Numbered from the stretch's first letter, positions 16,301 to 37,488 are shown. The stretch is 37,848 nt of DNA from Intoshia linei (GCA_001642005.1 LWCA01000233.1:1-37848), one strand, 5' to 3'. Numbers and translations: made by a program. Notes: a model not told the origin generated them from the sequence alone.

Positions 16301-19300
16301 ATTTTATAAATGTCATCAAATTGTTTCATCATTTTAGCAAAAATATCTATTTTACAGTTGTTAACCAATTTTGACAAAACGACCAGTATTGATTTTATTT
16401 TTGATCCTTGAGAATCTTTCCATGTGTGTAGTTTCACATATTTTATTATAAAATTGTAACTTTCAGATATATTGTTGAAAATATGCATTATATGGTTTAA
16501 TGTATTGTATTCTATGCGATGTCGTATTTCTGATGCTTCAATTTGTTTGTTGTAAAGGTTTTTTTTACGTTTGTTTATGAATGCTTCAATGCTTAATTTT
16601 GAAAATTTTGAGTAGGATAAATCTACTTCATATGTTTCTCGGTTACATTCATTTTTACATGTACAGTTTAATGCCTTTTTTACTAAATTTTTTATAAAAT
16701 AATATTCAAATTTTATTATAATTCTCATTTTTATATAATAATATTATTAATAACTAATAAAAATTTCTAATACTTTTTAAATATTACTTTTTTTGTTGCA
16801 AATTATATATTCATCCACATTGCACAATCGAAATTTTCCTAAATTTTATAATTTCATTTTTTATTATATAGGATTTGCAGCGTCAAAATTCTATTCTAGA
16901 GACTCAATTAAATTTCATATTAGAATATTCAATAGTGGATCTTAAGTGTTAACTACGTGGTACATGCAATTATTTTTAAGCATTTTAAATTAGATAATAA
17001 CAATAAGATTTATAAACAAAGATAATTAAAAAGTACATACCAGGCATATAGACAAATGTACAATTACAAATACTGTAAACATAGTCAGTAGTGCATTCCA
17101 TAACACATTTAGAGTAAGAATAAGATGTATTTGGATACATGGATAAATTTTGTTCACCGCAACATCCATATGGTGGTCCCAAACTAGTCGACTAATAATA
17201 TGTTTTAAATTATATATTTAATGCAGTAGTTTCTGTCCAACATGAAAGTAAAGTAATCGGATATTTAGTGAATTCATAATAAAACGAACATTGCATGAAT
17301 TTAGACTGGATATATGAATATTATATATATATTCTTGAATATTAGACTCAATATTCACATTAAACAGCAACGACAAATTAAATCCTTACTTTTAAAGTAA
17401 TGTAAGATAAAATAATGAAAAAAAAATATTAAATTACAGTTAATTCCTCGTTAACGAAATGAGATTTTTTTTGGACAAATTATTCCGTTAACGAGGAATT
17501 TTTTTAGAAAAACATTCTCGTTAACGTTGTGTGTGTTAACTGGAGATAACTGTATGAACCGTAAATTCTTTTAAAATTCTAGGACTATTTTCATTTTTTA
17601 AAAAAAGGTAATTTGTGGTTTTGGTTCTGAAGATATATATTTTTGAAATTTCAATAATTTAAACTTATGAGAATGTTCATGATTTTAAAATCTGTATCAG
17701 ATTATACTTTTTTAAATTTTTCGACTCATTTGAAGATCAAAAAAAGGATAATTGGGGTTTTTGACTGACTTAAATTACTTAAATAAATTAAATTTTGCAG
17801 CACTAGCTGCTGTTTGTGCGAAGTAAATAACAGTCAAGCTAATTACTTTATATAAGTACATACAGATATACTTGTATAAATAATTATCAATTAAATATAC
17901 ATTATAATGTACATTGTATAAATCAGGGGTTTCCAAACTCATGTTGTCTACCGCCCTTTCAAAATGTTTCCACTACGTCGTATATATATTTAAAAATTTA
18001 TTCAATAAATTAACAATTTTTTTTAACTGATTATGTCAGAAGTCGATAAATAATATATTTATTACTGTTACTATTTATATCAGTGGATCCCAAACTTGCT
18101 ATAAAAATATAAAATATAAAATATAAAAATCAAAAAAATTTATTAACAACCAAAAAATTCATCAACGCTCCACTCTATCCATCTAAAATCGTTTTTCGAA
18201 TACACAGTGTAATTAATAATTAAAATATTATAATAAAACAATCAATGAACATTGACATGGAATTATATTTTAAATTTAATACCATATCAATTTTACTATA
18301 CTGAAATTTCTATTTATCTTTTTACAATTTTTTAAAATCGCCCCTAACTGAAATTTAATCGCACCCCTGAGGGCAATATCGCCCACTTTGGAAACCCCTG
18401 TTATAAATGGTCAATAATAATGTAATGTGCTTACATTGCTATATCTTATCGAAACCATTGAATGCTGTCCTGGAGAGACAGAAAAACCAAGTTGTTTTAC
18501 GTTAGGTAATCCTTTGCTATCATGCAAATGCAACTAAAAAAATATATAACGGATTTTGTTTGGATCATGTTGCAGACACAACAAGCCACTAAATGACTAC
18601 CAGCTAGTTAAAACTAATATAATATCTATCTAAAACGCCTCAAAGCAAATTTGTCGCCAATTACATTACCTTAAATCCAGCATCTGAATTAATTCCCCTG
18701 AAATGATCATATTGTTCAACATTCAGAATTAAATACAATCCATTTTCTGAACCTATTTATATATAGTTAATATACATAATATGTATTATATATAGGTGTA
18801 ATTTGCTAGATTTTAGTGGTATTGTCAAACTTGTTATATATTGGTGTGTCAAACATTTAAAATTTAAACCACAACTTTGTATGTGTATAATTAATAATTA
18901 TAAAATGTATTATATATATATAAACATATAATTGTGTTCAATAAAATTAGTGGGTGTAACTCTTTACACATCGAAACAAAGTTAAAATTAAATATTTATT
19001 TCGTATAACATTTAAACAATCAATGATGAAAAAATTAATAATTTTTAAATTATTTCTACATGATGTAAAAATTCAAAAATATTTCCATTCATTACCAAAA
19101 TATTTTTTCTTTCATAATTCTCAGTTACGGATGGAATGAGGTTGAATCTGACAACTTCACCAATAAGATTATTAATAATTATATTCGACGTCTTCATATT
19201 TTCGACCAATGTATTTTTTATTTTCACATATATAGTTATTGTAAATATTTGCCTTGCAAAATGTAGTATATTCATAGTACCATATTTATATAAATAAGAT

Positions 19301-21959
19301 ACAAACATCAATATGACTACTATGCTAAAATAAACGTCCATAAGATTTGTAATTATCATTATCATCATTGTATCATCATAGTATTTGTATTTCAAAAAGT
19401 ACGTCAACAATGATACAACCATTTGAAAATATTCATCAACTGTGACTTCAATAATATGTAATGTTCGGATTTCGTACAAATCTTCGTTAAACATTTTTAC
19501 ATATTCAGCCAAATTGATATTAAGAATTTTAAAATTATATAAACTCATATTTTACTACTTTGGTTATGATTAAGAATATTATAATAAGCATAATACTTGA
19601 TTGGTATTATAAATATATCCATTGTATTACAGGTTTTATATTAAATTTCGTTTTTGTTTAAAAATATATATTTGATTTGTATATATATGTACATTATACA
19701 ATGTACATAGTGTTTTCCCAACAACTAACTAAAATAAAATAAAATTTCACTGACTACTATTTCATGTCAAATTTCCAGAAATTTTATTATTTTATTTTTA
19801 TATTAATTCAAAATCATAATTTTAATAATCATCATAATAAACTTTCACATTTAAGATCATTTTTATTTTACGTATAAATTTCGAGTATACTAAATCCTAT
19901 TAGTATTAAAGATGATATCTCGTATGATTTTTTAATTGGAAAAAAACACAATTAATATCTTTATATATTCTACCATGATGAAACCACTGCAACGAATTGC
20001 AAGAAATAATTAGTTTTTTTTTACTTATTAGTCGTCTATTCCTTGCTTCGCTCATAGTTCGTCTGCATACCATATAAACCATTTTTTTAAATTTATCATA
20101 TTATTAAATATATATTATTTATACAGTCCGACCTTGCTTTGGGGCAAATCTCGGTGTGGGGCATACTCGTGTTTTGGGGTACTTTTTCAGTATTATGTTA
20201 ATTTTATAGTATTTATATCGAGGGCATAGCAATATATGTGAAATTAACCCCGCTTTTGGGGCAAAAATGTTTTAAATATAAAATATATAAATATAATTCA
20301 TATAGTGATGACATTAAATTAAAATTATATTTATTCAAATATTTTACATACATTTTCATATGTATTTATCATAATTTATTAATTTTTTATTCATGCCTAT
20401 ATTTTAATATCTGATAAACTATTAATTACTATTCTAGATTAGAAACAAACTATAATTCTAAAAATTATTACAAAAACATTTATAACTTTAATTTAAGATT
20501 TTTATTAGATTTTGATTATCAGGTATTACCTGAAAATATACCCTAAACAGTGTTTGAGTTTTAAAATAATATTATTATTACTTAAATACATACTTATAAC
20601 ACTTATTTATTATCAGTATTATAATATTCTTATCTACATAATATATTATTTATAGAACATAAAAATATGTTATATACTACAACAGAGGTTCCCAAACAAA
20701 GATAATCCCAACCCGTCGATCGCGATCTACCAGTCGATGTTCAAGTGCCCGAAAGTCCATCGTGGGATGATTTTTAGATAACTTTTCTCTAACATTGTGT
20801 AGTTTTTTTTCTAGTAATTCTCTCCCGCCGTATGAATCTAGTAATAGTTGCCAATTGTGATTTATGATTATGATCAAGTTAAGTTGTATGTGAAACTGAA
20901 TAATGAAGATATTCGCACAACCATAGTTTTTATTTTATCGGTGTTTTTGCGTTCTCGGTCTTCCCCGGCTAGTAGATCTTCAAAAATCAGAAAATGTCAA
21001 AGAAAATCTTAAATGAATAAAGGTTGGGTACCCCTGTACTACACCATCATATGCAGATCCATCTTAAGAAAAATGCCGGAGGCCCTTTAACATTTTGAGC
21101 GAAGCAATAAAAAAATTTTAGGGTCCCTTTTTAGAAGTCAGGGCATAATATTGGTTGGAGACTTAGACTCTTATTTCATTGAGTATTAATAAAATAAAAC
21201 CATTAAAATATATTATGTAGGTTTCTAGTAACTTTTATTTCTTTTACAAAAACTTAATTAATGAACAAAGTTTACTTTTAATAAATTAGGAGCCTCTTTT
21301 AAGATATAAATGTACAGTACTTTTATTAATTTAGAGGTATTTTTTAATAAGTGGCCCTGGGCTACATCCCATATTGCCCATGCCTTAAAACGGCTCTGAT
21401 CATACGTATTATCACATAATACTTAAAATCATATGTATTAATATAAAACATAATCAATACATAATAGTCACATATTGAATGTTTTATTTACTAATTTTGA
21501 TATTAATTGTAGCATAAATTTATCGGTTATGAAACACCTGACCCTGTGAAAATAAGTTTATTATTTTTTTAATTTTCTAAATCGTATTAACAGTGTATTT
21601 ACCAGTTTTATTTGTAATCAATACGTTGGTTTCATTTCCGTTAAAAGTATAACATAATCCCATATCAGTAATAGTTTTTTGAAACATTTTATCCGTGCAT
21701 GACAGTCCCTCCCATTCACATCTAATAAATTATAAACTATGCAACTGTATAACTACGTTTCATAAATGAAACTGTAAAATATCCAAAAAAGATCTATTAA
21801 AGTCTGTATTTTTCTACGAATTGGACTTTCTACGTATCAAATGTTGATAATCTCGCATCACATGAACAATATTTGTATATTACTATAAAGCTTACTTATA
21901 TATCATATCTTCATACTGATGAGAAGCCTGATGCACCAATTTAAAAAATGATTCATTTA
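13327..21959 (-). CDS. DEG/ENaC C-terminal portion: finger end, palm/beta-ball, thumb, expanded knuckle, TM2
   Basis: SHQYEDMIYKCEWEGLSC...GLCYTFN; GLYLILNVEQ; GFSVSPG; thumb C..EC...CNC..MPG..C..C..CTC..EC; TM2 DIGGYMGLLLGGSAITVMEIVDF. Confidence 0.93.
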
Positions 21960-24900
21960 CTAAATTGTAAATTCTAAAAATAATATTAATTAAATTTAAC
22001 CTGTTTTATCATAATAATATTGATTTGTTAATTTATCCAAAAATTTTTTTTCTCCCACATTAAATTTTGATTTTTTATCATACTTGTCTATCAAAAGTTC
22101 AATTTCATCACCTGTATTTATATTTGCAGTCTCCTTTCTTATAAATTGAACTTTATATTGAGGTACAGTTAGAAATTTATACAATTTTTTATCTTCTTTA
22201 ATGCTTTTGCCAACGAAAACTTTACCTGTAATTAATCTTACTATATTTCAATTAATAATAAAAATTGTAAAATTCACATTATACAAGATAAATTTTAATT
22301 AGAGTACTGAATGGTTGCATATTTCTAGGTTAGTGTCAAACTTCAACTATAATTACCATATACGGGTTCGCAAACGTTTTTGACCACGAATCGGTAATGT
22401 AAAATAAAATTTTCCCAAATGAATATACAAACCCTTAATATATAATTCCAAGAAATTACAAAAACAAAAAAATTATTTTTTCTTTTGTAAAATACATCAT
22501 TACAGAGTTGTCAGGGTTGTGGTTTTATCCCAAAGCCTAGGCGATCGCTAGATTATTATTTTAAAAATTAATAATAAGTAAATAAAATTCAATAATATTT
22601 AATAAAAAATACCATTTCAGCCCTTTAAGTATAAATCCCCTTCTTACGATTTTACCCCTGTTGCCCACCCCTGTTCTAAACATAAAAACTTTGTGAAACT
22701 CACAAGCGTCGTTGTATTCAGTTTACATTTTACAAATTAGTCATTAATATATTTTGAAAAAAATTTGTTGATGCCAGCAAAGTTACCAGCAATCTTTTTG
22801 TTGGTACCAGCAAAAACACCACCCTTTGATATTCCATAAGAACCAAGCTTTAAAGAAATAATAGAGCAGTAAATAAATTAAAAATAGGGTTTGCAGGAGT
22901 TACTGTAATGATGCAACATATATCTTATCGGACACGCTACATGACAATATTGAGTTTCAAGAAAAATTACCAATACAAGGATGATGTAAAGTTTCAATTG
23001 AATAAATTTGAAAAAATTCATTAAGATTATAATGAGTAACATTGATTCGTAATCTATAATATCCAATTGGCAAGTTCGTAGCAAAAATTAATTTATTTTG
23101 TGTTTTTGTGGATTCCAACAAAAATTTTTCAATTATAGACTCGCCTGTATCAATCAAAAACAAAATTCCGTCAATTGTTGCCGTATAGGTTAATTGAAGG
23201 CACTTTTTTAGTAATATGTTTACTAGTGGCGACGATATTGAGACAGTGTTAATAGATTTTTCGAAATTTTTTGTTATTAAGCATATACCTTTAAAATTTA
23301 AAATTATCTTTAATAAAATAATCTATAATAGATTCCCAAATTTTTCGTAATTATATCAAATTTTATATTTAATTCAAACTTAAAACTAGCTTGACTGGTT
23401 TTTACTCCGTACAAAGAGTAGCTAGCTCTGCCGAGGGCCAACTTTTTTAACTTTTCAGGTTGACTTTAGGAAGGTGATTAATATACAGTGATTCATATTA
23501 TTACCATCTAAATTTCTATTTGAATAACATTGATTTCTAAACCAATGCATTGGACCCATCCCATAATTCATGTAATCACATATATCAACATTATTGAAAT
23601 GACAATCAAAATTAGTCGACTGAGCTTCTAAAATAAAATGATACAATGCTAAAAATACATTTCATAGTAATTAAATGCATGCTTAATTATAATTCTAAAA
23701 TTGGGTAGACGACATACGAATTTATTACAGCTGTTAGTCCTATTCTTATATTAAATGGCTAAGTCGATACTCTAAAGCAGTTTACAATATATCATGAATT
23801 TTTTGGATATTAGTATTAAATTGAAAAATTGTAAGTCCATTTATATTTTATTTAAAATTGTCATCATTATCTACAAATATGTAACGGCACCAAGTTCTAT
23901 GAATTATCACGCCATCTATAGAACCGCAAACTGGTTACACTGTATCATTAAATATTACGTAAATCTTGACAATAACCATACGTAGCACTAGTTTCAGAAA
24001 TGGCAACCAATATTGAATTAAATCTATCCACCCTTGATGAAAAAATTACATTATATGCATTTCCATATATTTGAAAATAAAATTTATTCCAAATGAATAT
24101 ATCAATATTCATTAACATTAACACATTTAATGTGTTAATATATTCAACAATAAATCGAAATTGAACATTTTTTGATTGAATTAATATAAAAGAAAAGCAA
24201 ATTGGTGATTTTTTTTCAAAATATGGAGAAATTAAATAAGTTGTTTCAGGGTAGTTGATTATATCGATCAATTCCGATATCATTATTAAATCTAAATTTT
24301 AAAATTAATCAACTTTTATCAAAAAAAAAATATTGGATCTGTACCTGTATTTTTAGGATAAATAACATGATAGTAAATTAAAAATCCTGAACGAGTCACA
24401 TTGAAATCGGATGTAAATTTTAAGAGTACATTATGCTGTTTAGGTCGAACAATTATCGGGACATCTTTACCACATAAATAGTACAAAATTTGGGAATTGT
24501 TATTTGGTCCATCATAAATCTACTTATAAAAGATTTATATATATTTTTATCACTTTTAATGAATCATAGCAAAATTGTTTCTCATCTTTTATTCCTTCTT
24601 CAAGGTCAAATTCAAGGAATTTCAGTTCGATTATTGAACCGGAAACTTGTAGTATACGTAAATTACAATCCAAAAAATTTGTATAGTTATTTGGGAATCC
24701 ATACGACTAAATGTATTTTATTGTATAGTAGTACAATTATAATATTACATTAACTTGTTTTTTATGTAATCTATACATATTACGTCGTTATAGTTAAAAG
24801 TCAATTTATTACGTTTTTTATCAATTTTTTTTAATATTGCTTAATAAAATTGGTATTTTCACTTTAATGGTCCGCGATAAATTTTATAATATATTACCCG

Positions 24901-27900
24901 CAGCGCTGAAAAAAGTGAGGGAATCCCTGAATTATAGATACCTTAATTTTTCCTTCAGATTTAGTAAAAATTTCATCACAGTTTGCTTTCTGAACATTGT
25001 CTATTTTTTTGATATTATTATTTAGTTGATATTTTTGTTTTTTAAAAGTATCAAAATTAGATTGAAACATTGTTTTTGGTATAGTAACCCATTTCAAATG
25101 GATATTTGATGATCTTTGCGTATACCCACACATGCTTCCATCAAAGTTGCATGTTATTGAATCCTTGTCATTAGAATCTAAATGTTTCAAATTATTTAAA
25201 AATTGGTCCAATCAAGAGTCCAAAAATCTAGGAATTTTTTTTGAAACCGTTAAATCCTCTTCTTATATAAAATTAAATGTCTGTGTGCTACCGTTTATTT
25301 AAAACATTGACACTCGTAGAATTTTAACATCAATTTCTAATAGAGTTTTTCCCAGAGCATGTTTATATATATTTTTGAGTTTCTACATTTGAGTCCTTCA
25401 GATTCAAAAACCAAACTTTCCCTTTTGTTTAAAAAAAATTAGCCCAAAAATTTGATAAAACATACATTGTGTGATGCTTTTTAAAATTATTGACATTGTC
25501 GTAAATCTCAGCCTCAGAAACGCATACATTCATGATCAAAACCCTTTTTTTTAAATGAAACATGTTCTAAAATTTTATAAAACATAATTGTTGAATAGTT
25601 TTTAAAATCATAAGCATTATAATAAATAGTCATCTCAAAAAAGTGAAGTTTCATGACCAAAACCACAGATTTCCTTTTTTTAAAAAAAATGAAAATAATA
25701 TTAGAATTTAAAAAAATTACAGCTGATACAGTTATATTTAATGAACACACACAAAAAATTTATTTTCAAATTTAACCGTTGCATTATCAATTTGATAAAA
25801 CAACAGGTTAATAGGATTACAGATAAATTACAATGAATACATTCGTACAAGTTTATTTATTAATATTATTATGTAGAAACGTTTTAACAGAATCGAACCT
25901 ATTCTATCCGAAACCTATTTTATTGGCATTTGAGTAATGTCTACAATTGACTAAATATGTTTAAATATCTCGTATTCTACATTGAAATACGTATTGATTT
26001 TATTGACTAAAACTTGCCTTAAATATAATATAATATACACAATATGAGGCACTTTTTCTGAACCTTTTTTACTTAAGGGCGCATAACATAAAATTTAATA
26101 TAGTATTAAAATTTAGGCGACCTTATATTTTGATAAGAAAAAAACTCATATTCGAAAATGTTCAAAGATCAAAAATGATCAAAATATAAAATCGTAATAA
26201 ATTATTATACAAAATTACTTTTAATATAACTAAGTTAGTTAAACTAACTTAAATTTAGTAAGGAACATTTGATGTATTATGAAATGTTGATATTTTCGAT
26301 ATTCACCATATTATTTATATAAATATATTATATTAACATAAATTAATAGTAAATCCCAAATTTTGAACTAATAATCGTCAATGTAAAAGTTTGACACTAA
26401 TTTTTAAAATGGCGGTAGAATTTTTTATGACGCTGAGCACACGTTGTGGTAAAAAATTAGGAATCACTGCTGTCCTACAACCGTATTATAATTATAATAC
26501 AACTCTTGAATTGCAAATATTCAAATAATGTATACTCATCATTGCGTAACAAACACAAGTATCGATAATGCAGTCAACTTTAGCGCATTGAGAAATATAC
26601 TTCTCGCAAGTATCTAAAATAAGTACATGTAATTAAATAATTATTTACGGTGTTGTGCACTGAGATACGAGCTATTGTGCAACTAGATATGAACTAGTCT
26701 GCATTCACATACGGACAATTATTTTAAAAACAGTTTCGAGATAATTTAATTGTTAATGAAATGTTTTCAAAGTTTTCATTACATTGTGTATATTTTAATT
26801 TAGATGTTAATTATTTTAACCAACAAGAAGAACTATTGGAATACATTAGAAAATTAACAACAACAATCAAAAATTACGATGTATCAATGAACACGCACAT
26901 TCTTTCATTCCCAAGACCAAGGCAAGACAATCTTCTATCCAGAAAAATTAATTTTTTGTATATTTTTAATCGTTTTGGTCTTATTTATTTTTTAACGGCG
27001 TTGAAAGAAATTTATTTTTAATGAAATTAAAAATATACACAATGTAATAAAAACTTTAAAAACAAGTCATTACCAATTAAATTTAAGCAAAATTTTTTAA
27101 ATTAAGTTAACTAGAAAATGTATGTAAGAGAACTAGTCCGTATATAGTTGCACAATAGCTCATATCTCAGTGCACAAATCTGTACATAATAAATATGTAG
27201 TACACATACATATAATACATAATACAATACACGTAATATTATTAATATTAATAATATTTGTTTTCATTCATTTTGAACAGGTATTTTAATAAATTATGAT
27301 TTTAATATTGTCATGAAATTGTTGAAATTGTGCAATTAGTTGATTTTTGATTTTTAGGTACAATGATTTTATCATGACTATTTGTACTTAGTACACACTT
27401 TATAACTCATACAGTATAAGTACACAGAGCACTGTAACTATAACTTAAAATATAATATACATTTATTATGAAGGTCAATAGTATTAACACTGGGATAGGC
27501 TAACATACCTTTATCACATTGATTCATGTAATTACAAATTCCTGATTCCATTTCAACGGAATCAAAAGAAATATCACTGTGGTCCGGATTTTCAGTTGTT
27601 CCTTCATAAACAACGTGATATTCTCCCATTGGAAGGTCTATACACTTTAAGTTCCATGAATTTATGGTGGAATGGAAAATTTTGAAAAGAGATCGAGTAT
27701 AAATTCCAAAAATATTGCGTTGTGTATATAATGTTAATGATGATATTTTGTCATTTTTCAACAAATTAATGTACAATTGAAATCTTAACGTAGTCTTATC
27801 GGTGATATTGATCTTTGGGCTCATTATTATTGTACTATATCCAGATGTACAATATTTTGAGTTGACCATAAGAAACTTTCCTAGTATATTAATTAATTTA

Positions 27901-30900
27901 CTTTTTATTTAATTATAATTTTCAATTTTTACAAAAAACTCTCCAGGGTTCAGGAATTTAATTTTGAAATTTAGGAAAATGAAAAAACTAAATAATTTGA
28001 CAAAAAATATAATGATAATCCTTATAATACACTATCTGAACACATTAAGTGACCCCCGTTAATCCATAGATTTAGTTTAGATACATAGATTAGACAATAG
28101 TTTAAAGTTTAGACTCTATGCTACCATGCCCGATGACCCTAAAATAATTTCGCAAAATATTTAGAAATGCCATATATCCTTAGCCACCTCTCAACGGATT
28201 TGGAATTGACTGTTAAAAGTTTAAACAGTTTAAATTTGATACATAAAATACTCATGAGTCATGAATCGTGACTCATGATATTCAAAAATATTTTTTTCAA
28301 CCTCAGTTTGGCTCTATTTTATAATAATCGTTTAATTTTAAAAGTATACCCAGTATTTTGTGTTTGTGATCAAAATATGGTCCAAGTAAGGTCTTGGCTT
28401 CAAATGCGTTAGTATTTATCCACATGTTCAATTCATTAATTTTATAAGGATTTCCAATAGATCCTCTTATATACCCACAAATGTAATTATCTGAAAATTC
28501 ACATTTAACTGAAGAATCTAAAATATATATTAAAATTTACAATCGTGCTACACCAAAGACTACTGTATACTTAAATATATGTTTATATATTATATTATGT
28601 ATATATATTATTATATGTTTAAGCTGTCCTTGGCTACACAAACATACAAAATTTTGGAAATTGAATGTGTAGTGCAGTAGTTCCCAAACTTTTTCCACCA
28701 TGGACCACTTGTCACAAAAAAAATGTATGTAGACCATATAATTTTTTTTAAAAAATCCCCCTAATCCTGAACACGTCACTTATGTAATATTTATAATTTT
28801 TTATTATATATTCCTCCATAAATCGAAAATTTTACATTAATTTTGACATGGTAGCTTCAATGGCATCATTAAAAAAATTATTAATTTGAAACATAATTAT
28901 GGCGAACTACCAGTGTTGAACCTACCGTACCGAGATCCTTCTACCGATGGATCTCAGTGAAATTTTTTTTAAATGGGGTTTTAATTTACCAAATTGAGCA
29001 TTAAAAAATTCTTGAATATTAACTAGTTTGTGTGTTAAATTTAAAATGTCAACTCATTAGTTTTAGAGAGGGGGTAGGGTTATATGACATTATAATTCGT
29101 TTTATAACAAATTTTTTTATAGGCCACGAGAATGCTAGGTTCGGTTCTAGGAACTACTCTATAACTAAGTTAAATCGTTCATAGATTAAATTTAACGCAC
29201 GTCAAAATTATTCATGTTATGCAGTAAATTTTCACATACATACAACATTTATACGTTCACTAATAATAATAATAAATGATCGATAATAAATAATATTATA
29301 ATCTCTTATTACTGTTAAAAAAAGGTTATGTTCATTTTATTTAAAATTTTTCTTGTCAACCACTTTGAGAACCACTGGCCTAGTGTGTGCTACCGTTTAA
29401 TTAAAGATTAAGAGTCCTATGATTTAAAACACCAACGTTTTAATACAGTTATTAAAGAGTGATACAGCATCGCAAATTTAATTCTCAGAAATTGAGTTCA
29501 ATTCTTCAGAGACAAAACCACCATTTTTTGAAAAATAAAAAATCTAGGGGTCGTATATATTATTGAATTATCATAACTAATATATAATTTGCAGTTAATA
29601 TATCGGACAAACTCCAATATAAAAACGTAACACCTTCACTAATAAAAAATCACTTTAAAATTCGATTTCCTTTATTTGGTAACTATTTTATTCCAAAAAA
29701 ATATTATTCTTATACAGTTTATTGCAGTTCTATCTATTACATCTAGAAAAAAAATGTGAACCCCAGAATTCTTCATATTCTATGTCAAAAATTACTTTTA
29801 TTATTTTATCAGCCTATATTTTTAAAATTTTATGTAACAAAAATATATATGAAAATAACCAACATTTATCTTTTTTTAGTTTTTAAAAAATGAGAATTGA
29901 ACGTGTATCATTTTAGTTGGGTTTCAGTTTCATAATTTTTTCAGTTTTTATATTATTCCTTTGCAATGTATGAGATTCAAAAAGTTTCAAAGTTTATTAT
30001 TATAATAATTAATAATTTTTAAATTTATTTTTATTATGGTAAGATTTTTTCACTCAATTTTTTTCAAATTGACTAAATCCTTTAATTATTGATATAAAAT
30101 ATTTTTTACTTATAAACAGAAAATATAATATAATAATTTGATACTGAATATTTTTTATCACATGCTAATCGGGAAGCCAGAATATGTACGACGGTACCTA
30201 CATTCAATAAGGTATTTACAATTTAATTTTTTTGTCAATCGGTTTAAAAATTACCAAAATTAGACCTTGAAAGTCATGTAAAATACATCATACAATATAT
30301 GCTCCAAAATTAATGCATATTAAATGTTAAAATGTTAAAATTTGATCAATTACTACAATTTAGTTCATCAAACTGGTCTCCACAATCATCATATCCATTG
30401 CAAATTAAATTTTTTGAAATGCACTTTCCCGATTTGCACTTATACTCGTTATTTGTACAGGCTAAAATAATTTTAGAATAAATTAAAATTTCTTTTTTGT
30501 GTACATGAATATGAAATCATCAGAAAGTTACAAATATTTTACAGTTATGTATTATCTTCATAGTTTAAAACCCTAAGCAGTGTTCCTAACTAAGATTTCT
30601 GCAAGAAATAAAAAAAATCACGAAAATCTCCATGAGATCTGTATATTTAATTTTAAAAATTATACTTAGATGTTCATAGTGGGTGACGTACCTACTAGGT
30701 ACTAAGTTAGTACTACTAACTAGTATTTTCAACGTTTTATTCCAACTCACAACTCATTTATCTCAACATATAATATTTTTTCATGAACCCAAAATATACA
30801 TGAAACCTTATGGCTCGATATGGAACATTTCGTGGCCTCAACTTGGTTTTTTCTTACTTGGTTGAATAGGTTATTTCAATAAAACTGAGAAAAATTCACT

Positions 30901-33900
30901 CATTAAGAGGTAATTAGTGAATAAACAAGATAGAAATATGTATTAATTAAATATCTATGAAAATAACCAATTTATTTTATAATTTTAAAAAATGAGAATT
31001 AAACGTGTACATTATTATTATATATATTAAATTGTATGCACTTTTAAAAATATTATTTATTTAGAATCTACGAAGGACGGTTTAACCGTATTAAAACTAA
31101 CTTACAAAAAAATGAATTACATAATATGTATTATTAATATACTTAATATAATAATATACATAGAATATGTATTATGTATTCATATTATTAAAAATTGCGC
31201 ATCATTTATAACTTATTTTTTAATATCCTAACAGTCAAATCCAACTCCATGTAGAGGTAGTTTAGCGGTCAAGAGGAACCTACCCAGCTCGAGACACAGA
31301 AAATTAAAAATAAGCTATAAAAAATTAACCAACGATTGTAAAAAAAACCAAAAAAATAGTTTTGATTTTCAAAAGTATAATTTTTTTTAAATACTCAATT
31401 TGTCAAAGTGGAAACCCGTTTTACAAAAATTTCGTCGAGTTGCCGAAGGGTACGTTATGTCGACTAAGGTATGCAAGGCACTGTTTATAACGTATCGTTA
31501 GTTAAAATTTTACTATAGGCCAATTTTAGATTTTAGGCAGGCATCAATCATTCAGTAAATAGGTTCGGCTATAGATACACATTTTGCTGTTATGAATCAA
31601 TTCATGAATTTCACATTACAATATAAGTTAAATTACCACAATAAGGAATATCACATTTTTCTGTATGGAGATGACCATGAATTTCTACAAAACAAAATGG
31701 ATTTTTATAAAATTCAATTATTCTTTTTTCGTTTCTGCAAAAATTTTGATGCTTAGAAAAATCCAAATGACGCAAGTGTTTAAAATTTTGAAATTTTCGG
31801 ATAACAGAATCCCAATATAAACAGTTATTGTTGTTTTGAGACACATTTACTTTACCGGCAAAATGATTTCCTCCATGTGTAGTTTTGCAGTTTCTGTCTA
31901 ATAATAATTATAAGTTTATAAGGTACTCTTAATAATTATCAGTCTATATAATTAGTAGCTTCTCTGTTGTGTACTATGTATAAATAATTAAATTTAACGA
32001 AAGCGGCATCTTTATGGTATCTTTTTTTAAATTAAATTGAAGCTCCATCTTTTGAATATAAAAAGTAGTGGAATGCATATTACTGTGTTCTGCAACACGA
32101 TCCATAGGACGAACTTTAAATTTTTACCAGTAAATACCTTTTTTGAATGTGAAGAACTTTGTATTATTGAAATTTTTTAAGTATCCAAAAATTATTTTTT
32201 TTTATATTATTTCTGAAAAAGGCTGTGACTATTATATGGGACTGTTAGTTTTTCGATTTTTAAAAATAATGGATAAATTGAGTTTTTTTGCTTTTGGTCA
32301 TTATGGTGAATGTTATTAAGATTAAAAGTTATGATTATGTTCATGATTTTAAAATCTGTATCAGAATTTATATTTTTTTAAATTCCAGAACTCTTTGTTT
32401 TTTTAAAAAAATAATAACTTTTAGTTTTAAATTTGGTCTTAGAACGATTGTAGTGCTGATATATTTTTAGCTAAATAGTTCTAGGCTTAATAAACTTCTA
32501 TAAATGTAGAAATAATAAAATTACAAAAATTTTCACACTTATTCACCTTGATATCATCAATGATTACTGCTGATGTAACATTGTTGGGTCTAATTGATTC
32601 TATAATAAGAGTATAATATCCATATTTCAACTTTATCATGACATGTTTCCATTTATAATAAAAAAAGTGTTCATTTTTTTCAATAAAAACTTGGTGAATA
32701 ATTTCTTCAGACATGTCTTCCTTCTTAAAAATTATATTTAAGCGAGTTGTTATATTTTCTATATTTTTAACAAACATTTCAAAACAAGTATTGTTGAAAA
32801 ACATGAAATCAGAGTATATTCTTGCTTTATATGACGAATCTCCATTCAACATTGGCAGTAGAATATAATGCCCTTCGTTTGACTCAAAGGTATGATCGGT
32901 TGATTTGATCATATAATTAATGGAAGATTTACTACCGGCTTTAACAATATAAAAGGTATCCTTAAATTTTATATTGGTGCTAATTTTAAATAGGCACGCT
33001 TTACCACCTGATTCAAAATCACAATATACGTTAGCTTCATTCCCAACCCTGCGACGGCGAAAATAATAAATAGAACTACAATTTCTATTAAATGTTGCAG
33101 AATTCACACTCCGAGATACGTAAACGTCGCTGAATTTGGTACTTTTAACCGTTATTGAACTTAATAGACAACTTTTTTCCTTTTCGTCATAAAAAAATGA
33201 TGAGCACTTGTATTTATGTTCCATTGAACATAATATTTTACACATTAGTACTGGAACTATTTTGTACTTTACGTTCCAATTTATTGATATGTATTCATTA
33301 TAATTTTCTGGGCAAACGTTTTTAAATCGGAAATAGTCCATTACACAGTCTTTTCCTAGAAAATTAAATTTTATTTTTTAATTTTTATTTAAATCTGAAA
33401 TCCAATGTTAGATTAAATTACCCAGTTTTTCAATGTCAGTGTCGTTTATGTAATATTTATGTAATGAATCATATAAATTCATTTCAAACAATTTTGTAAG
33501 TCTGAAATTTAATTTTAATTTAATTTAATGTTAATTAAACTTATTATAATGGATAAAATTATTCAAATTATAATCTGCGTTACAGGGTGGATGGGCGGTT
33601 CTAAAACCTGCACTAAGTACAAAGTTGTTTTTCTGAGACAAATCCGAACTTACTATGCTCGACGCCAGAAAATAAAAAATAGACCTTAAAAAAGTGAAAA
33701 AAAGTTTTAACTTTAAAAAAAATCTGAAAAATTAACCATAATAGAAACGTACATGATCGATGTAAACACGATCACCAAATTATAAAAATAATATAACTTT
33801 TTATATCAAAAATTTTTTTGTTTTTATAATGTGGCTAGAGCCGTCTTAAGCCACTTCGTGGTTACTTCGTGGCTAGGCTAAGCAAAGGACCGGAGGCCCT

Positions 33901-34576
33901 TTAAAGTTTTGAGCAAAGCGATAAAAAAAATTTAGGGCCTTTTTTCAAAATTAATAAAAAAAATCAAAGATTTCCTACTTTCTGTTTTGAATATTCAGTT
34001 AATAGAAAGGTTTTAATATTTAATATTATATTTTAAAACAGTTTTTATGGCAAAATTATATTATGAACATTGTAGAATATATTTTAAATTGAATATTTAC
34101 CAGAACTTTGATTCTTTAAACTATTTTCTTTCTAGCTATTTGAGTTCCCAAACTTCAAAACTTATAAATTGTTTCTTAAGATATCAATATGAAGTATTTT
34201 TAATAAATTGGGGCCTCTTTTTAAGATATAAGTGTAAAGTACTTTTATTAATTTAGGAGCCTTTTTTAATGAGTGGCCCTGGGCTACAGCCCATATTGCC
34301 CATGCCTTAAAACGGCTCTGAATGTGGCCCACAATTTTTATCTGTATCAGGTCATAATAATATAAACAATTCTAACCTGTACATGTTGTGATTGCATATT
34401 GTGATTGACGGAAATTTTAGTTTGCTGGCATATGTCACTTCGACGTTAACTATTTTCGTATTTTCAAATAATTGTATTATTTTTGAAAACAACAAATATC
34501 CGAAAGTTAAAACAGCAAATATATTTACTAGACACCACAAACTCCTATAAATTAAATTACAAACATATATATACAT
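13327..34576 (-). CDS. Giant DEG/ENaC (ASIC-like) channel subunit with PAN-MAM-Kringle-LDLa-MAM-MAM/CUB-MAM modules inserted in the finger region and an expanded knuckle; ~2,010 aa
   Basis: Exons 5'->3': 34544-34377, 33501-33422, 33355-32525, 31897-31637, 30461-30354, 28517-28350, 27880-27509, 26613-26536, 25177-24942, 24706-24554, 24519-24345, 24291-23959, 23627-23505, 23288-22971, 22936-22904, 22225-22001, 21959-21896, 21721-21603, 18752-18670, 18533-18435, 17191-17041, 16838-16788, 16682-15721, 14293-13609, 13481-13327. All are GT-AG and phase-compatible with no stop. Channel motifs: TM1 + FPSITICNHN, CEWEG..C, TDMGLCYTFN, GSENGLYLILNVEQ, AGFK.HLH, PPYG.C Cys-rich thumb, NFVILNIFFGEL, SDIGGYMGLLLGGS. 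Channel identity is secure. A single transcript including the insert is inferred from splicing. Confidence 0.8.
17437..17552. mobile_element. Small pogo/Tc1-type MITE
   Basis: TA|CAGTTAATTCCTCGTTAAC ... GTTAACTGGAGATAACTG|TA, with an internal inverted repeat. The same terminus is inverted at 14731-14750. Confidence 0.7.
17924..18400. mobile_element. hAT (Charlie/Buster-like) MITE
   Basis: Perfect TIRs CAGGGGTTTCCAAA ... TTTGGAAACCCCTG. TSD GTATAAAT/TTATAAAT (7/8). Confidence 0.88.
19045..19548 (-). CDS. Hypothetical 167-aa intronless ORF with a hydrophobic segment, nested in a DEG/ENaC intron
   Basis: Stop-free 167 codons in very AT-rich DNA. An in-frame TAA lies two codons before the ATG. 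No family recognised. Confidence 0.45.
   Translation of the reverse strand: MSLYNFKILNINLAEYVKMFNEDLYEIRTLHIIEVTVDEYFQMVVSLLTYFLKYKYYDDTMMIMIITNLMDVYFSIVVILMFVSYLYKYGTMNILHFARQIFTITIYVKIKNTLVENMKTSNIIINNLIGEVVRFNLIPSVTENYERKNILVMNGNIFEFLHHVEII
20683..21036. mobile_element. hAT-type MITE
   Basis: TIRs CAGAGGTTCCCAA ... TTGGGTACCCCTG. TSD TACTACAA/TACTACAC (7/8). Confidence 0.75.
21054..21398. mobile_element. Second copy of the 33836-34320 hAT-type MITE
   Basis: Shares CCGGAGGCCCTTTAA and GTGGCCCTGGGCTACA..CCCATGCCTTAAAACGGCTCTG. TSD ATCATATG/ATCATACG (7/8). Confidence 0.85.
22971..23627 (-). CDS. Insert exons: fourth, divergent MAM domain
   Basis: CHFNNVDICDY...W (23627-23505) and SISSPLV...CLQLTY...LPIGYYRLRI...HPC (23288-22971). 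Confidence 0.7.
23959..25177 (-). CDS. Insert exons: MAM domain interrupted by a complete CUB domain
   Basis: MAM start CNFDGSMCGY..W, then CUB CDEIFTKSEGKIK|SYGFPNNYTNFLDC...FLEFDLE...CYDSLK|IYDG...LCG...FTSDFNVTRSGF, then MAM remainder YLISPYF...CFSF...W...VAISE...GYC. Confidence 0.8.
26648..27182. mobile_element. Tc1/mariner-type MITE with ~50-bp TIRs
   Basis: TGTGCACTGAGATACGAGCTATTGTGCAACTA...ACTAGT is inverted at ~27132-27176. TA lies on both flanks. Confidence 0.85.
27509..28517 (-). CDS. Insert exons: second MAM domain (two exons)
   Basis: 28517-28350: CEFSDNYICGY...W...GPYFDH. 27880-27509: GKFLMVNS...IMSP...LRFQLY...W..KCIDLPMGEYHVVYEG...DISFDSV...GIC. Confidence 0.85.
28675..29377. 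mobile_element. hAT-type MITE (older)
   Basis: TIRs CAGTAGTTCCCAAA ... TTTGAGAACCACTG. TSD GTGTAGTG/GCCTAGTG (6/8). Confidence 0.65.
30354..30461 (-). CDS. Insert exon: LDL-receptor class A repeat
   Basis: CTNNEYKCKSGKCISKNLICNGYDDCGDQFDELNC, with six Cys and an acidic DCxDxxDE tail; phase 1-1. Absent from the ORF track. Confidence 0.9.
31637..31897 (-). CDS. Insert exon: Kringle domain
   Basis: CKTTHGGNHFAGKVNVSQNNNNCLYW...NFCRN...PFCFV...CDIPYC, with six Cys in kringle spacing; phase 1-1. Confidence 0.88.
32525..33355 (-). CDS. Insert exon: PAN/Apple domain + MAM domain
   Basis: PAN: CKILCSMEHKYKCSSFFYDEKEKSCLLS...YYFRR. MAM: CDFESGGKAC...DHTFESNEGHYIL...ARIYS...CFEMF...WKHVMI...IIDDIKVNKC. 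Confidence 0.85.
33836..34320. mobile_element. hAT-type MITE with perfect 8-bp TSD
   Basis: TIRs (t)AGAGCCGTCTTAAG ... CTTAAAACGGCTCTG. AATGTGGC lies on both sides (33828-33835, 34321-34328). Confidence 0.9.
34377..34544 (-). CDS. DEG/ENaC exon: TM1 and FPxxTxCN palm motif
   Basis: SLWCLVNIFAVLTFGYLLFSKIIQLFENTKIVNVEVTYASKLKFPSITICNHNMYR, followed by a GT donor in phase 2. Confidence 0.9.
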
Positions 34577-35164
34577 TAGGGCTGTTCAAAAAAAAATCCA
34601 TGGTCACATCATATACTTCAAAGTGTGTAATAACGTATGTGCCTATTAAAAATGGTCAATTTTTTAAAAATGTGTGCCCTAAATCAATTTATATCTTCAA
34701 AAGTATATATAAAATGTAAAGTTTATTTTTAAATATTTCATCGATAACTAGCGTAACAATTCTATTTACATTTATTTATTTTATTTATTCGTTTATAAAA
34801 GTTTTATAATAATGAATAAGTTAAGTGATTTATCTCGATTGGCAACTGAAATTAATATATTAGAAAGATATGCATTTCTATTTCATACTACCAAGTCCAT
34901 TGATATTTTTATGGAAAAAATGTCGAATTAAAACAATTACAAAGAATTAAATAAAGCGTAGATTATTACAATTAATAACAAGAAAAAATCAAAACATAAG
35001 GCATGGCATACATAACAAATTTATAAAATTATTTGACATTTCTTGTGAACCTAAAATTTTTGAATTAATTTTGGACCAGCAATTTTACAATATATACGAA
35101 TATATATAATAATAACAATATATATATACGAACCTGTAACTAGTACTAACGATTTTACGAAATC

Positions 35165-35359
35165 ATGTATAAAAAAAAAAATGAAAAAGTGTACTGTTAC
35201 TGTAGAAATCCAGAAGGATATGACGATTTTATGGTCAAATATTATCAGTTCTTAGAGTGGTTCCACGGAAAATGTATTAATATGCCACAATCAAGAGTAA
35301 AATCTATGGATAGATTTTACTGTCTATATTGTAAAATAATCGCCCATAAGAATGATTAA
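35165..35359 (+). pseudogene. Degenerate PHD-finger ORF
   Basis: VYCYCRNP..DDFMV-(YYQFL)-EWFHGKCI...FYCLYC. This is the PHD pattern with the second CxxC pair lost. Confidence 0.65.
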
Positions 35360-35720
35360 ACCGATATGACTAATAAATGAATTACGTAATACGACAAGGA
35401 GTCTTGCAAGTGTAGCTATGGCTTCGCACACGATACATGAAAGAAACGAGAGAGAAAATAAAAGTATTAGAGAAAAAAGACCCCAGATAGATACAAAGAT
35501 TTTATTAGATATTGACAAGTCAAATGTATATTTGACTTGTGAAATTACGATCTATCTAAATTGTGTGTTATGTTTAGTTATCCGTGATAATATTTTGTTC
35601 GAATATTATTCAATAGCCATATTGGATTTTGTTGTTACGACAGTAAAATATTTAATGTGCAATAAACTTACGTTGAAAAAAAAAATTTTCTCGCGAAATA
35701 TTTTATATACATTATCATAA

Positions 35721-36367
35721 ATGTTTAGCCTGTTTAAAAATGATACAACAAGTGGTGGATCTATGGATCAATTAATGTTTCTGCAGAGCCAGTATAAAGA
35801 AGATGGTCTACGTCAGATTATAGAATCAGCCGAAATCTGGGCAGATATTGGTGCATTAGACGAAGAGGTATTAATTAAGTTATTATATTTGGTTCTGAAC
35901 GGTTACGACCTAAAAAAGTTCAAGACGGGTATAATTTCCAAAAATGTAACAACATTACGCGAAGCGAAAGACTTTATGTTAAATGAAGGAGAATTGATAT
36001 GTTAAAACCTTGTTACGACAGGTATAAGTCGCAAGTAATAAACGCCAAAAACGTACGACAGTCTTACGAGACAATGGTAGACAACCTTATGAAGCTAGAC
36101 GACAAAGTTAGCAGAGACTCGGCCGAAATTATTGCATATCAAGAACTATTAAGGCGACTCCCCCTAGAAGTTTGAGACAAAATACGTTTTGAAAAAGATA
36201 ATATCGACATAGCTACGGCTATGATGCGCTCACATGTCACGACACAGAATGATAGACCGGACATCTAAAAGAACGAATTACAACGCTGTTTCAAGTGTGG
36301 GCTACCGGGACACTGCGCGTCAACCTGCCGACGATCTGGAGGGGAAAGTGTAGCGCATAGGCGCTAA
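35721..36367 (+). mobile_element. Decayed retroelement gag-like gene with CCHC zinc knuckle
   Basis: ORF 35721-36005 continues after a frameshift and through two in-frame stops to CFKCGLPGHCASTC (36287-36328, CX2CX4HX4C). GC content is locally higher. Confidence 0.7.
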
Positions 36368-36620
36368 GAGATGGAGGAAAAGAGAAGATATATTTATTGT
36401 CAAACTTGTTTTTATCATTTTTGTTAATTAAATATTCAAAAGACGTTTTTACATTACAATATTTAACGTTTAATTTTAGTTTAACATCAAAAATATTATA
36501 TACAAAACCGATGACTAAAAATAATAACTTAAATATTTTACACTGAATGTTGATAAGAATTATAACTATAAAAATGTTGACAGTAAGATTAACATTTAAT
36601 TTTTATTAATTAATTTGCAT

Positions 36621-37240: not shown

Positions 37241-37488
37241 AGCAATAATTTCAAAATTGATGTTTTATTACTGTATTTAATAACGAGAAACTACTGTAAT
37301 AAGTAAGAGGATTTTAAATTTATAAAATTATATTTACAGTTTTCGAGAGTGTTGTTTTATCGTAAATTTAATTTTCAAAAATTGACTTCTTTAAGGTAAA
37401 AAACATAATTGTCCTTTTTTTTAAATTCAATCCGTTTTAGAATTATAAAAAATTTCAAAGTCAAACAAAACTTACAACATTATCAACT

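What the first reader, a model, noticed from the sequence alone, without database searches (positions are those of the whole stretch)
21896..34544. Receptor-channel chimera: ~1,138 aa of PAN-MAM-Kringle-LDLa-MAM-MAM/CUB-MAM modules spliced into the finger of a DEG/ENaC channel
Seen in sequence: after TM1 and FPSITICNHNMYR, a finger exon (33501-33422, LTKLFEMNLYDSLHKYY..EKL) is joined by only a 66-nt GT-AG intron, in frame, to the PAN-MAM exon. Fourteen module exons (3,414 nt) then run without a stop. A 41-nt intron returns in frame to VNESFFKLVHQASHQYEDMIYKCEW, the finger/palm of the same channel. I found no separate start, signal peptide or TM segment for the module block. Established: DEG/ENaC subunits are usually ~500-800 aa, and the finger is the variable regulatory surface (the ENaC protease-sensitive GRIP domain; peptide sites in FaNaC-type channels). 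MAM, CUB, LDLa, Kringle and PAN domains bind proteins or matrix. Inference: a trimeric channel with a large adhesion/receptor ectodomain, possibly gated by a protein ligand, a tether or a protease. I do not know a characterised DEG/ENaC with this architecture.
Basis: partly seen in the sequence, partly recalled or inferred. Interest (0 to 1): 0.93.

Follow-up and report, generated by a model that had tools for sequence, protein, structure and literature searches.

The report
Giant sodium channel with built-in adhesion modules
This gene of the parasitic worm Intoshia linei encodes a sodium channel of the DEG/ENaC family, about four times the usual size, with a chain of about 1,100 residues of protein-binding modules built into its outer "finger"; a second gene in the same genome and three genes in the annelid Capitella have the same design, and I found no paper that describes or tests it.

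Summary
On the minus strand, a DEG/ENaC (PF00858) TM1 exon and a finger exon are followed in frame by module exons: PAN, MAM, Kringle, LDLa, MAM, a MAM with a CUB nested in it, and a fourth MAM. The frame then returns to the finger/palm, and the gene runs on to TM2 at 13.4 kb.

Four results support one chimeric gene rather than a nested gene:
- A transcript contig carries the TM1 exon, 81 further letters (the length of the finger exon plus one base) and the PAN-MAM exon.
- A diverged paralog on contig C1079 has the same order. There, half a MAM domain, an LDLa and the channel palm lie in one uninterrupted 982-codon frame.
- Three Capitella teleta proteins have the same architecture (1,980, 1,933 and a partial 1,109 aa). 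The 1,980-aa one aligns collinearly with the window from TM1 to TM2.
- The module exons contain no signal peptide or membrane segment.

GenBank splits the locus (OAF69766.1, modules only). The window's own 3' junction (the 41-nt intron) was not seen in RNA. Function is untested. No paper on this architecture was found. The scan had already noted the paralog (s1-783159). I rate it a new variant of a known kind.

The parts
34377..34576 (-). First coding exon found: short N-terminus, TM1 and the post-TM1 motif FPSITICN. It ends in phase 2 at a GT donor.
   Evidence: PF00858 positions 19-81, 39 bits. Hydropathy 1.95. The RNA contig edge lies exactly at 34377 (X2 record 12 and X1 record 8).
33422..33501 (-). 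Finger helix alpha-1 exon (80 nt).
   Evidence: Aligns to Capitella LT(K/Q)LQE.GLYDLF directly after FPAVTICNSNKYR. Its length matches the 81 unlisted letters of X2 record 12, and the bin depth fits coverage of the exon but not of the intron.
33356..33421 (-). 66-nt GT-AG intron joining the finger exon to the PAN-MAM exon (phase 1).
   Evidence: Sequence. Removed in X2 record 12, judged by length arithmetic.
32525..33355 (-). Module exon E1: PAN/apple, a YYFRRRR motif, and MAM 1.
   Evidence: MAM 45.4 bits. PAN 19.1 bits, below the 21.4 cut-off. Local MAM HMM E 1e-20. RNA joint 32525|31897.
31637..31897 (-). E2: Kringle.
   Evidence: PF00051 42.4 bits. RNA joints on both sides.
30354..30461 (-). 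E3: LDL-receptor class A.
   Evidence: PF00057 45.6 bits. RNA contigs X1 record 1 and X2 record 10.
28350..28517 (-). E4: N-terminal part of MAM 2.
   Evidence: Exon of GenBank model P0001. In P0001, MAM spans residues 426-593.
27509..27880 (-). E5: C-terminal part of MAM 2.
   Evidence: PF00629 39.6 bits.
26536..26613 (-). E6: 26-codon cysteine-rich mini-exon with no family match.
   Evidence: Present only in GenBank model P0001. No Pfam hit. Not checked against RNA.
24942..25177 (-). E7: N-terminal strands of MAM 3, then the start of CUB.
   Evidence: Local MAM HMM positions 1-26, E 1.5e-5. CUB spans residues 693-806 of P0001.
24554..24706 (-). E8: middle of CUB.
   Evidence: PF00431 26.8 bits.
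24345..24519 (-). E9: end of CUB, preceded by a 34-nt intron.
   Evidence: PF00431 29.2 bits. Intron length.
23959..24291 (-). E10: C-terminal part of MAM 3, so CUB is nested inside this MAM.
   Evidence: Local MAM HMM positions 59-157, E 8e-5. Capitella shows the same order.
23505..23627 (-). E11: N-terminal part of MAM 4.
   Evidence: Local MAM HMM positions 1-26, E 1.2e-4.
22971..23288 (-). E12: C-terminal part of MAM 4 (weak match).
   Evidence: Local MAM HMM E 0.057 only. Borders and frame.
22001..22225 (-). E13: 75-codon linker with no family match. It ends in phase 1.
21960..22000 (-). 41-nt GT-AG intron at the return to the channel. If retained, a TAA stop follows at once.
   Evidence: Sequence.
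21896..21959 (-). Finger return exon (helix alpha-3, motif SHQYEDMIYK).
   Evidence: Homologous to SHQLKDMVFGC in the C1079 open frame and to AHKLDDMLYSC in Capitella. The latter aligns to ASIC residues 152-175.
21602..21721 (-). First palm/beta-ball exon (begins CEWEG); the low end is approximate.
   Evidence: PF00858 positions 153-195, 34 bits. Capitella residues 1235-1274, 47% identity.
16988..18756 (-). Three palm/thumb exons, at about 18664-18756, 18414-18539 and 17030-17203.
   Evidence: PF00858 positions 200-323. Collinear tblastn hits with Capitella.
13508..16743 (-). End of the palm, a second large insertion in the knuckle, then strands beta-11 and beta-12.
   Evidence: PF00858 positions 351-416 and 393-434. 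Capitella residues 1390-1958 align here. The insertion lies between about ASIC2 residue 350 and residue 387.
13330..13491 (-). TM2 exon with the pore motif GDIGGYMGLLLGGS, then a short C-terminus and the stop.
   Evidence: Aligns to TM2 of ASIC1. PF00858 positions 431-455.

Best explanation
This is one gene for one very large DEG/ENaC subunit of about 2,000 residues. It belongs to an annelid-wide subfamily that no one has characterised. The pore-forming parts (TM1, palm, thumb, TM2 with a GGS filter) resemble acid-sensing ion channels. Between finger helices alpha-1 and alpha-3 the protein carries about 1,130 residues of extracellular binding modules: PAN, MAM, Kringle, LDLa, MAM, a MAM with a nested CUB, a fourth MAM and a linker. 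A second insertion sits in the knuckle. A trimer would therefore display three such arrays on top of the channel. This is the same place where ENaC carries its protease-sensitive GRIP domain (from general knowledge) and where FaNaC binds its peptide (reported in the 2023 preprint 10.1101/2023.02.01.526556, listed). Shown here: the architecture, its transcription across the 5' junction, and its conservation in a paralog and in Capitella. Inferred, not shown: the modules bind matrix or cell-surface partners, and binding, pulling or cleavage at the finger changes gating, so that the channel acts as a contact, tether or ligand sensor. I give the architecture about 0.9 and this mode of action about 0.35.
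For: The domain order and the resumption of the ASC profile were found exon by exon. All 16 exon borders from TM1 to the return exon are GT-AG, frame-consistent and free of stops. For RNA, runs X1-X3 cover exons and not unique intron sequence. X2 record 12 (959 nt) lies on 34546-34377, then has 81 letters not listed, then lies on 33354-32647. The finger exon plus one base is 81 nt. Joints 32525|31897 and 31637|30461 match the model. X1 record 1 extends 2,447 nt beyond the LDLa exon, while only 2,181 nt of module exons remain. The paralog on C1079 has TM1, FPRVTICNQNTFR, PAN, MAM, Kringle, LDLa and several MAMs. Its single 982-codon open frame then holds MAM profile positions 42-157 (residues 36-196), an LDLa (residues 200-238) and ASC matching ASIC1 from residue 153 (residues 275 onward). 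Capitella proteins P0028, P0049 and P0043 each carry ASC together with MAM, Kringle, LDLa and CUB. P0028 aligns collinearly with the window from 34558 to 13354. P0049 shows FPAVTICNSNKYR, then finger helix alpha-1, then PAN in one chain. The insertion site was mapped on ASIC2. The pore motif is intact. Introns of 34-66 nt are normal in this species, whose median intron is 57 bp (PMC6543705).
Against: The window's own 3' junction (22001|21959) was not seen in RNA, and retaining that intron gives an immediate stop. The finger-exon part of X2 record 12 is inferred from length and depth, not from printed bases. The contigs cannot exclude minor isoforms. No N-terminal HG-motif exon was found within 3.3 kb upstream, and channels of this family normally need that motif; Capitella has it. 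PAN in the window and MAM 4 score below curated or strict thresholds. The Capitella proteins are gene predictions, not cDNAs. Nothing here bears on ion conduction, binding partners or gating.
Confidence: 0.85

Rival explanations
1. Two genes: the modules form a separate same-strand gene nested in a large intron of an ordinary channel gene. GenBank's annotation implies this, since OAF69766.1 is 953 aa, contains modules only, and starts at a Met inside the finger exon.
For: In-frame ATGs lie at 33482 and 33341, and a TAA follows directly if the 41-nt intron is not spliced. Joining 33422 directly to 21959 would also keep the frame.
Against: One transcript contig holds the TM1 exon and the PAN-MAM exon. 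The modules are extracellular domains, yet the block has no signal peptide or membrane segment of its own. In the paralog, half a MAM, an LDLa and the palm share one open frame. Capitella models are continuous. GenBank's start codon lies inside a conserved channel helix.
Confidence: 0.04
2. An optional cassette: besides the giant form, a normal-sized channel is made by splicing 33422 directly to 21959 and skipping all 13 module exons.
For: X1 record 8 carries 100 letters beyond 34377 that the output does not show, so its downstream partner is unknown.
Against: No skipping joint or loose end at 33422 appears in the listed tables, although many rows were not shown. In the paralog a clean skip is impossible, because module and palm share an exon.
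Confidence: 0.2
3. A truncated product: retention of the 41-nt intron ends translation after the modules. This would give a TM1-anchored type II adhesion protein without a pore, either alone or alongside the full channel.
For: A stop follows directly after the donor. The 3' junction was not observed in RNA.
Against: The downstream channel exons remain open and conserved, with TM2 nearly identical in motif to ASIC1. The paralog and Capitella read straight through the same point. X1 record 1 continues at least about 266 nt past the last module exon.
Confidence: 0.1
4. An assembly misjoin or a decaying pseudogene.
For: The assembly is fragmented (3,520 contigs), and no HG-motif exon was found.
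Against: The same order occurs at two independent loci and in another species. Transcript contigs match at 99-100% with the predicted joints. There are 1,127 open codons in a genome that expects a stop every 11-12 codons.
Confidence: 0.01

Closest known systems
Capitella teleta hypothetical proteins CAPTEDRAFT_202568 (ELU13130.1, 1,980 aa), CAPTEDRAFT_202570 (ELU13132.1, 1,933 aa) and CAPTEDRAFT_202545 (ELU13901.1, 1,109 aa, partial)
   Same: They have the same order: TM1, finger alpha-1, PAN, MAM, Kringle, LDLa, MAM, MAM/CUB, MAM, linker, finger return, palm, knuckle insertion, TM2. They are collinear with the window.
   Different: Identity is only about 20-50% per exon. Capitella keeps the N-terminal HG motif and has a Ser/Thr/Pro-rich linker where Intoshia has exon E13. 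They are unnamed predictions, and I found no paper that mentions their accession numbers.
Paralog in the same genome, contig C1079 at about 18.9-6.4 kb (earlier scan note s1-783159)
   Same: It has the same architecture and the same two insertion sites.
   Different: It is deeply diverged (18-57% identity per piece). No CUB was seen there, although C1079 was not scanned for CUB. It has an extra LDLa just before the channel return and a Ser/Thr-rich stalk. Its last module-to-channel junction has no intron.
Acid-sensing ion channels ASIC1 and ASIC2 (solved structures such as 6l6p, 7rnn, 2qts)
   Same: These are the best solved matches for the palm, thumb and TM2 (E 6.5e-38 for the Capitella homolog, 8e-32 for the paralog). 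The pore motif GDIGG.MGL..G.S is shared.
   Different: ASIC subunits are about 500 aa. Here about 65 finger residues are replaced by about 1,100, and about 40 knuckle residues by several hundred. The filter reads GGS rather than GAS.
ENaC alpha and gamma subunits with the GRIP domain in the finger
   Same: A large extra element is inserted in the finger, and it controls gating from outside (PMC13488063, listed, for GRIP; its exact position is from general knowledge). A polybasic motif (RRRR or RRKK) is conserved after PAN in 4 of 5 members.
   Different: GRIP is a single small domain with inhibitory tracts, not a chain of adhesion modules. No sequence relation was tested. The basic motif may simply be the normal end of a PAN domain; plasminogen has FEKK there (from memory).
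C. elegans MEC-4/MEC-10 touch channel with matrix proteins MEC-1, MEC-5 and MEC-9 (from general knowledge)
   Same: A DEG/ENaC channel thought to need extracellular matrix attachment. This is the nearest functional analogy for a tethered channel.
   Different: In that system the matrix-binding parts are separate proteins. Here the binding modules are part of the channel chain. No mechanosensitivity has been shown for the present family.
MAM and LDL-receptor class A domain-containing proteins (for example Saccoglossus XP_077865040.1)
   Same: They are the nearest non-channel matches to the PAN-MAM exon (22-28% identity) and have the same module types.
   Different: They have no ASC domain and no pore.

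Membership tests
DEG/ENaC (Pfam ASC, PF00858) | Match to the family profile above the curated cut-off, with profile positions in order along the gene | tested here: met
   The TM1 exon scores 39 bits and palm exon 1 scores 34 bits (cut-off 23.6). Positions run 19-81, 153-195, 200-232, 233-267, 274-323, 351-416, 393-434 and 431-455 in genomic order.
DEG/ENaC (Pfam ASC, PF00858) | Two transmembrane helices flanking the ectodomain | tested here: met
   TM1 has hydropathy 1.95 over 19 residues. TM2 aligns to TM2 of ASIC1.
DEG/ENaC (Pfam ASC, PF00858) | Post-TM1 motif FP.(V/I)T.CN | tested here: met
   FPSITICN is in the window, FPRVTICN in the paralog and FPAVTICN in Capitella P0049.
DEG/ENaC (Pfam ASC, PF00858) | G/S-x-S selectivity filter in TM2 | tested here: met
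   GGS lies within GDIGGYMGLLLGGS and aligns to GAS of ASIC1.
DEG/ENaC (Pfam ASC, PF00858) | N-terminal HG motif before TM1 | tested here: not met
   No HG-containing open stretch lies between 34580 and the window end. The first Met found leaves about 12 residues before TM1. Capitella P0028 has TLHGL. An unrecognised upstream exon beyond the window is not excluded.
DEG/ENaC (Pfam ASC, PF00858) | Trimeric, amiloride-sensitive cation current | not testable with these tools
   Needs expression and recording.
MAM domain (PF00629) | Profile match above the cut-off | tested here: met
   E1 scores 45.4 bits and E5 scores 39.6 bits (cut-off 26.4). MAM 3 and MAM 4 are supported only by a local HMM (E 1e-5 to 0.06 in a 19-sequence set) and by position in Capitella.
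Kringle (PF00051), LDLa (PF00057) and CUB (PF00431) | Profile match above the cut-off | tested here: met
   Kringle scores 42.4 bits (cut-off 34.3) and LDLa 45.6 bits (cut-off 24.1). CUB scores 74.2 bits on GenBank model P0001 (cut-off 21.4).
PAN/apple (PF00024) | Profile match above the cut-off | tested here: inconclusive
   The window scores 19.1 bits, below the 21.4 cut-off. The paralog scores 23.7 bits, above it. The cysteine pattern aligns with Capitella.
ENaC GRIP domain | A finger insertion homologous to GRIP, with excisable inhibitory tracts | not tested
   Only the topological position is shared (plus general knowledge). I do not file the insert as a GRIP domain.

The most novel reading that the evidence does not exclude
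The family is a self-tethered sensor. The MAM, CUB, LDLa, Kringle and PAN array in the finger anchors the channel to matrix or to another cell. The long, possibly helical knuckle insertion (low-confidence prediction only) might form a central three-stranded stalk. Pulling, partner binding or cleavage at the conserved basic site after PAN would then open or close the pore. That would be a DEG/ENaC channel carrying its gating tether or receptor in the same polypeptide, kept in duplicate even in one of the most reduced animal genomes.
Probability: 0.3. Interest if true: 0.9.

Novelty: new variant of a known kind. Interest (0 to 1): 0.72.

Why it matters
How outside events reach the gate of DEG/ENaC channels is still debated, whether the event is force through a tether, a bound ligand or a protease cut. 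It is usually studied in channels whose partners are separate proteins. Here nature has fused a large set of binding modules to the finger, the known regulatory surface, and has kept that design between Capitella and an orthonectid that has lost most of its genes. If the protein conducts, it offers a single-gene system in which the insert can be deleted, swapped or cleaved while currents are recorded. The result also corrects the public annotation of I. linei, which splits this gene, and it adds a gene-architecture character linking orthonectids with annelids.

Tried and rejected
- A word-index search with the PAN-MAM exon found nothing. Its length window excludes long proteins.
- Two further word-index searches, with the Capitella palm and with P0043, found no member outside Capitella. 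This says little, because fast-evolving or fragmentary models would be missed.
- The ESM Atlas gave no usable hit.
- AlphaFold2 on the paralog's 982-residue frame with a four-row alignment gave mean pLDDT 30.8. I draw no structural conclusion from it, and no fold search was run. The helical look of the knuckle insertion in that model is only a hint.
All window searches were exon by exon by reference. Frame continuity was checked by exon lengths and phases. Full-length comparisons used database proteins P0001, P0028, P0049 and P0043.
- I considered reading the conserved RRRR as a proven furin site and rejected that. It may be the ordinary basic end of a PAN domain.
- I looked for an HG-motif exon upstream and found none.
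- X2 record 14 at 34570-34700 was not used to define the 5' end, because it carries variants and lies in a high-depth, repeat-like stretch.

Full report
**What is in the sequence**

The window is AT-rich (25.7% GC) and has introns. It is contig C1252 of a 41.6-Mb assembly. An exact protein match identifies the organism as the orthonectid Intoshia linei.

I scanned the minus strand against Pfam exon by exon, by reference:
- The ASC (DEG/ENaC) profile matches at positions 19-81 in the exon at 34576-34377, which holds TM1 and FPSITICN.
- Next come PAN and MAM (33355-32525), Kringle (31897-31637), LDLa (30461-30354), MAM (28517-27509) and CUB (25177-24345).
- The ASC profile resumes at positions 153-195 (from 21721) and continues in order to TM2 at about 13.4 kb.

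A MAM profile that I built from unrelated MAM proteins also recognises two more parts. One is a MAM N-terminus in E7 with its C-terminal part in E10, which means the CUB is nested inside that MAM. The other is a fourth, weaker MAM in E11 and E12.

**The exon model**

I used the exons of GenBank's own model (P0001), the RNA joints and the sequence.
- The model has a TM1 exon, an 80-nt finger exon, 13 module exons (3,381 nt, 1,127 codons) and a 64-nt return exon.
- Every border is GT-AG, no exon has a stop, and the block is entered and left in phase 1.
- Introns of 34-66 nt are ordinary in this species, whose median intron is 57 bp (PMC6543705).
I could not find the extra 33 nt.
- I did not build or search a joined protein. 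Continuity was checked from exon lengths and phases.

**One gene or two**

The sequence alone does not decide this. In-frame ATGs exist at 33482 and 33341, and a TAA follows immediately if the 41-nt intron is kept. GenBank annotates the modules as a separate 953-aa hypothetical protein (OAF69766.1) that starts at the Met inside the finger exon. Four results argue for one gene.

1. RNA evidence.
   - The three public runs that hold the locus behave as transcriptomes: their contigs lie on exons and drop to zero in unique intron sequence.
   - X2 record 12 (959 nt, minus strand) lies on 34546-34377, then has 81 letters that the table does not place, then lies on 33354-32647.
   - The finger exon (80 nt) plus base 33355 is exactly 81 nt. 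The depth in bin 33320-33519 fits coverage of about 111 nt, which is the exon parts and not the intron.
   - The tool masked low-complexity stretches on both sides of that exon, so this step rests on arithmetic, not on printed bases.
   - Joints 32525|31897 and 31637|30461 match the model.
   - X1 record 1 extends 2,447 nt beyond the LDLa exon, while only 2,181 nt of module exons remain. That transcript therefore continues past the last module exon.
2. A paralog in the same genome.
   - Searches of the genome for MAM and Kringle hit contig C1079 next to its strongest ASC match.
   - That locus has, on one strand: TM1, FPRVTICNQNTFR, PAN, MAM, Kringle, LDLa, several MAMs and TM2.
   - One uninterrupted 982-codon frame there holds MAM profile positions 42-157 (residues 36-196). 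It also holds an LDLa-like module (residues 200-238; 18.5 bits, below the cut-off) and channel sequence that aligns to ASIC1 from residue 153 (residues 275 onward, E 8e-32).
   - In that gene the module-to-channel junction has no intron, so a nested gene is impossible there.
   - The two paralogs share only 18-57% identity per piece. The design has therefore been kept over a long time.
3. Homologs in Capitella teleta.
   - A full HMMER search of 1.84 billion representatives with the PAN-MAM exon found 44 proteins.
   - A local phmmer scan of all of them with the Capitella channel parts found a channel domain in only two, both from the annelid Capitella teleta. Pfam scans confirmed ASC in both, and a later search added a third Capitella protein.
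   - CAPTEDRAFT_202568 (1,980 aa) and 202570 (1,933 aa) have the full order. 202545 is a partial model that begins in the finger helix, as the Intoshia annotation does.
   - P0028 aligns collinearly with the window from 34558 to 13354.
   - P0049 shows FPAVTICNSNKYR, then the finger helix, then PAN in one chain, and the alignment runs straight across the position of the Intoshia 66-nt intron.
4. No targeting signal of their own. The modules are all extracellular domain types, yet the block has no signal peptide or hydrophobic segment. TM1 of the channel would provide the membrane insertion they need.

Minor isoforms (block skipped, or the 41-nt intron retained) also remain possible.

**Where the insert sits**

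Against solved structures, Capitella residues 54-121 align to ASIC2 residues 20-87 (HG motif, TM1 and the first strand). Residues 1214-1384 align to ASIC2 152-331, and residues 1890-1958 to ASIC2 387-456.
- The first insertion (about 1,090 residues in Capitella, about 1,130 in the window) replaces about 65 residues between finger helices alpha-1 and alpha-3.
- A second insertion of several hundred residues lies in the knuckle, before strands beta-11 and beta-12.
- The nearest solved relatives are ASICs, ahead of ENaC and FaNaC.
- TM2 of the window gene keeps GDIGGYMGLLLGGS, aligned to ASIC1.
- No HG-motif exon was found upstream. This is one family feature that is not met.

**How it probably works**

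The shown part is a channel subunit with a large modular ectodomain. The rest is inference.
- MAM, CUB, LDLa, Kringle and PAN domains bind proteins or matrix in other proteins. The finger is the surface through which ENaC (via protease) and FaNaC (via peptide) are controlled.
- The most likely mode is therefore that partner binding, tension or cleavage at the finger modulates gating. I give this about 0.35.
- A basic motif after PAN (RRRR, RRKK, RRRR, RRRR) is conserved in four of five members and could be a convertase site. It may equally be the normal end of a PAN domain.
- An AlphaFold2 attempt was too poor to use (pLDDT 30.8).

**Comparison and novelty**

- By profile, motifs and pore, this is a DEG/ENaC member, apart from the missing HG motif.
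- It is not a GRIP-domain ENaC. It resembles the MEC-4 matrix-tether idea only by analogy.
- Full-text searches for MAM or Kringle together with ENaC or degenerin, for Intoshia or Capitella with ENaC, and for the accession numbers found no description. The library lacks most subscription journals.
- The architecture is visible in public databases only as unnamed predictions.
- This scan had already noted the paralog on another piece (s1-783159). I reached the paralog and the Capitella genes independently and checked both.
- I class it as a new variant of a known kind.

**Tools and limits**

- No step needed referral.

Noticed in passing
window 13508-16743 (-): There is a second large insertion of several hundred residues in the knuckle of the same channel. 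It is conserved in position in the C1079 paralog and in Capitella (residues about 1390-1890 of P0028). A very low-confidence model shows it as mostly helical.
   Followed up: partly
window 34120-34320 and 21261-21422 (-): A repeated element lies in two introns of the gene. Both copies have an open stretch reading RFKAWAIW.VAQGH. At the first copy, many slightly different transcript contigs pile up to summed depths above 1,000.
   Followed up: no
window 33482-23545 (-): GenBank protein OAF69766.1 (A3Q56_02497, 953 aa) covers only part of the module block. It starts at a Met inside the conserved finger helix, so the public annotation splits this gene.
   Followed up: yes
window 24942-25177, 24345-24706 and 23959-24291 (-): A CUB domain is nested inside a MAM domain: the MAM N-terminal strands, then the CUB, then the rest of the MAM. 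Capitella has the same arrangement.
   Followed up: partly
window about 33050-33070 (-); C1079 about 17390-17400: A basic motif directly follows the PAN domain: YYFRRRR here, YYRRKK in the paralog and FFRRRR in two Capitella genes. It is absent in the third Capitella gene. It is either a possible convertase site or the ordinary end of a PAN domain.
   Followed up: partly
window 34580-37848: No exon with the N-terminal HG motif of the family was found. A plus-strand PHD-finger-like gene starts at 35165 (22.9 bits, just under the cut-off), which leaves under 600 bp for the channel gene's 5' end.
   Followed up: partly
window 1827-2099 (+), perhaps up to 8899: There is the start of a Cys-loop receptor-like gene (Neur_chan_LBD, 22.1 bits, under the cut-off of 26).
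   Followed up: no
window 24520-24553 (-): A 34-nt GT-AG intron lies inside the CUB domain. It is the shortest intron in the gene, and it is taken from GenBank's model, not checked against RNA.
   Followed up: no
window 19048-19551 (-): A 168-codon open stretch with no family match lies inside the 2.8-kb intron between palm exons. Its nature is unknown.
   Followed up: no
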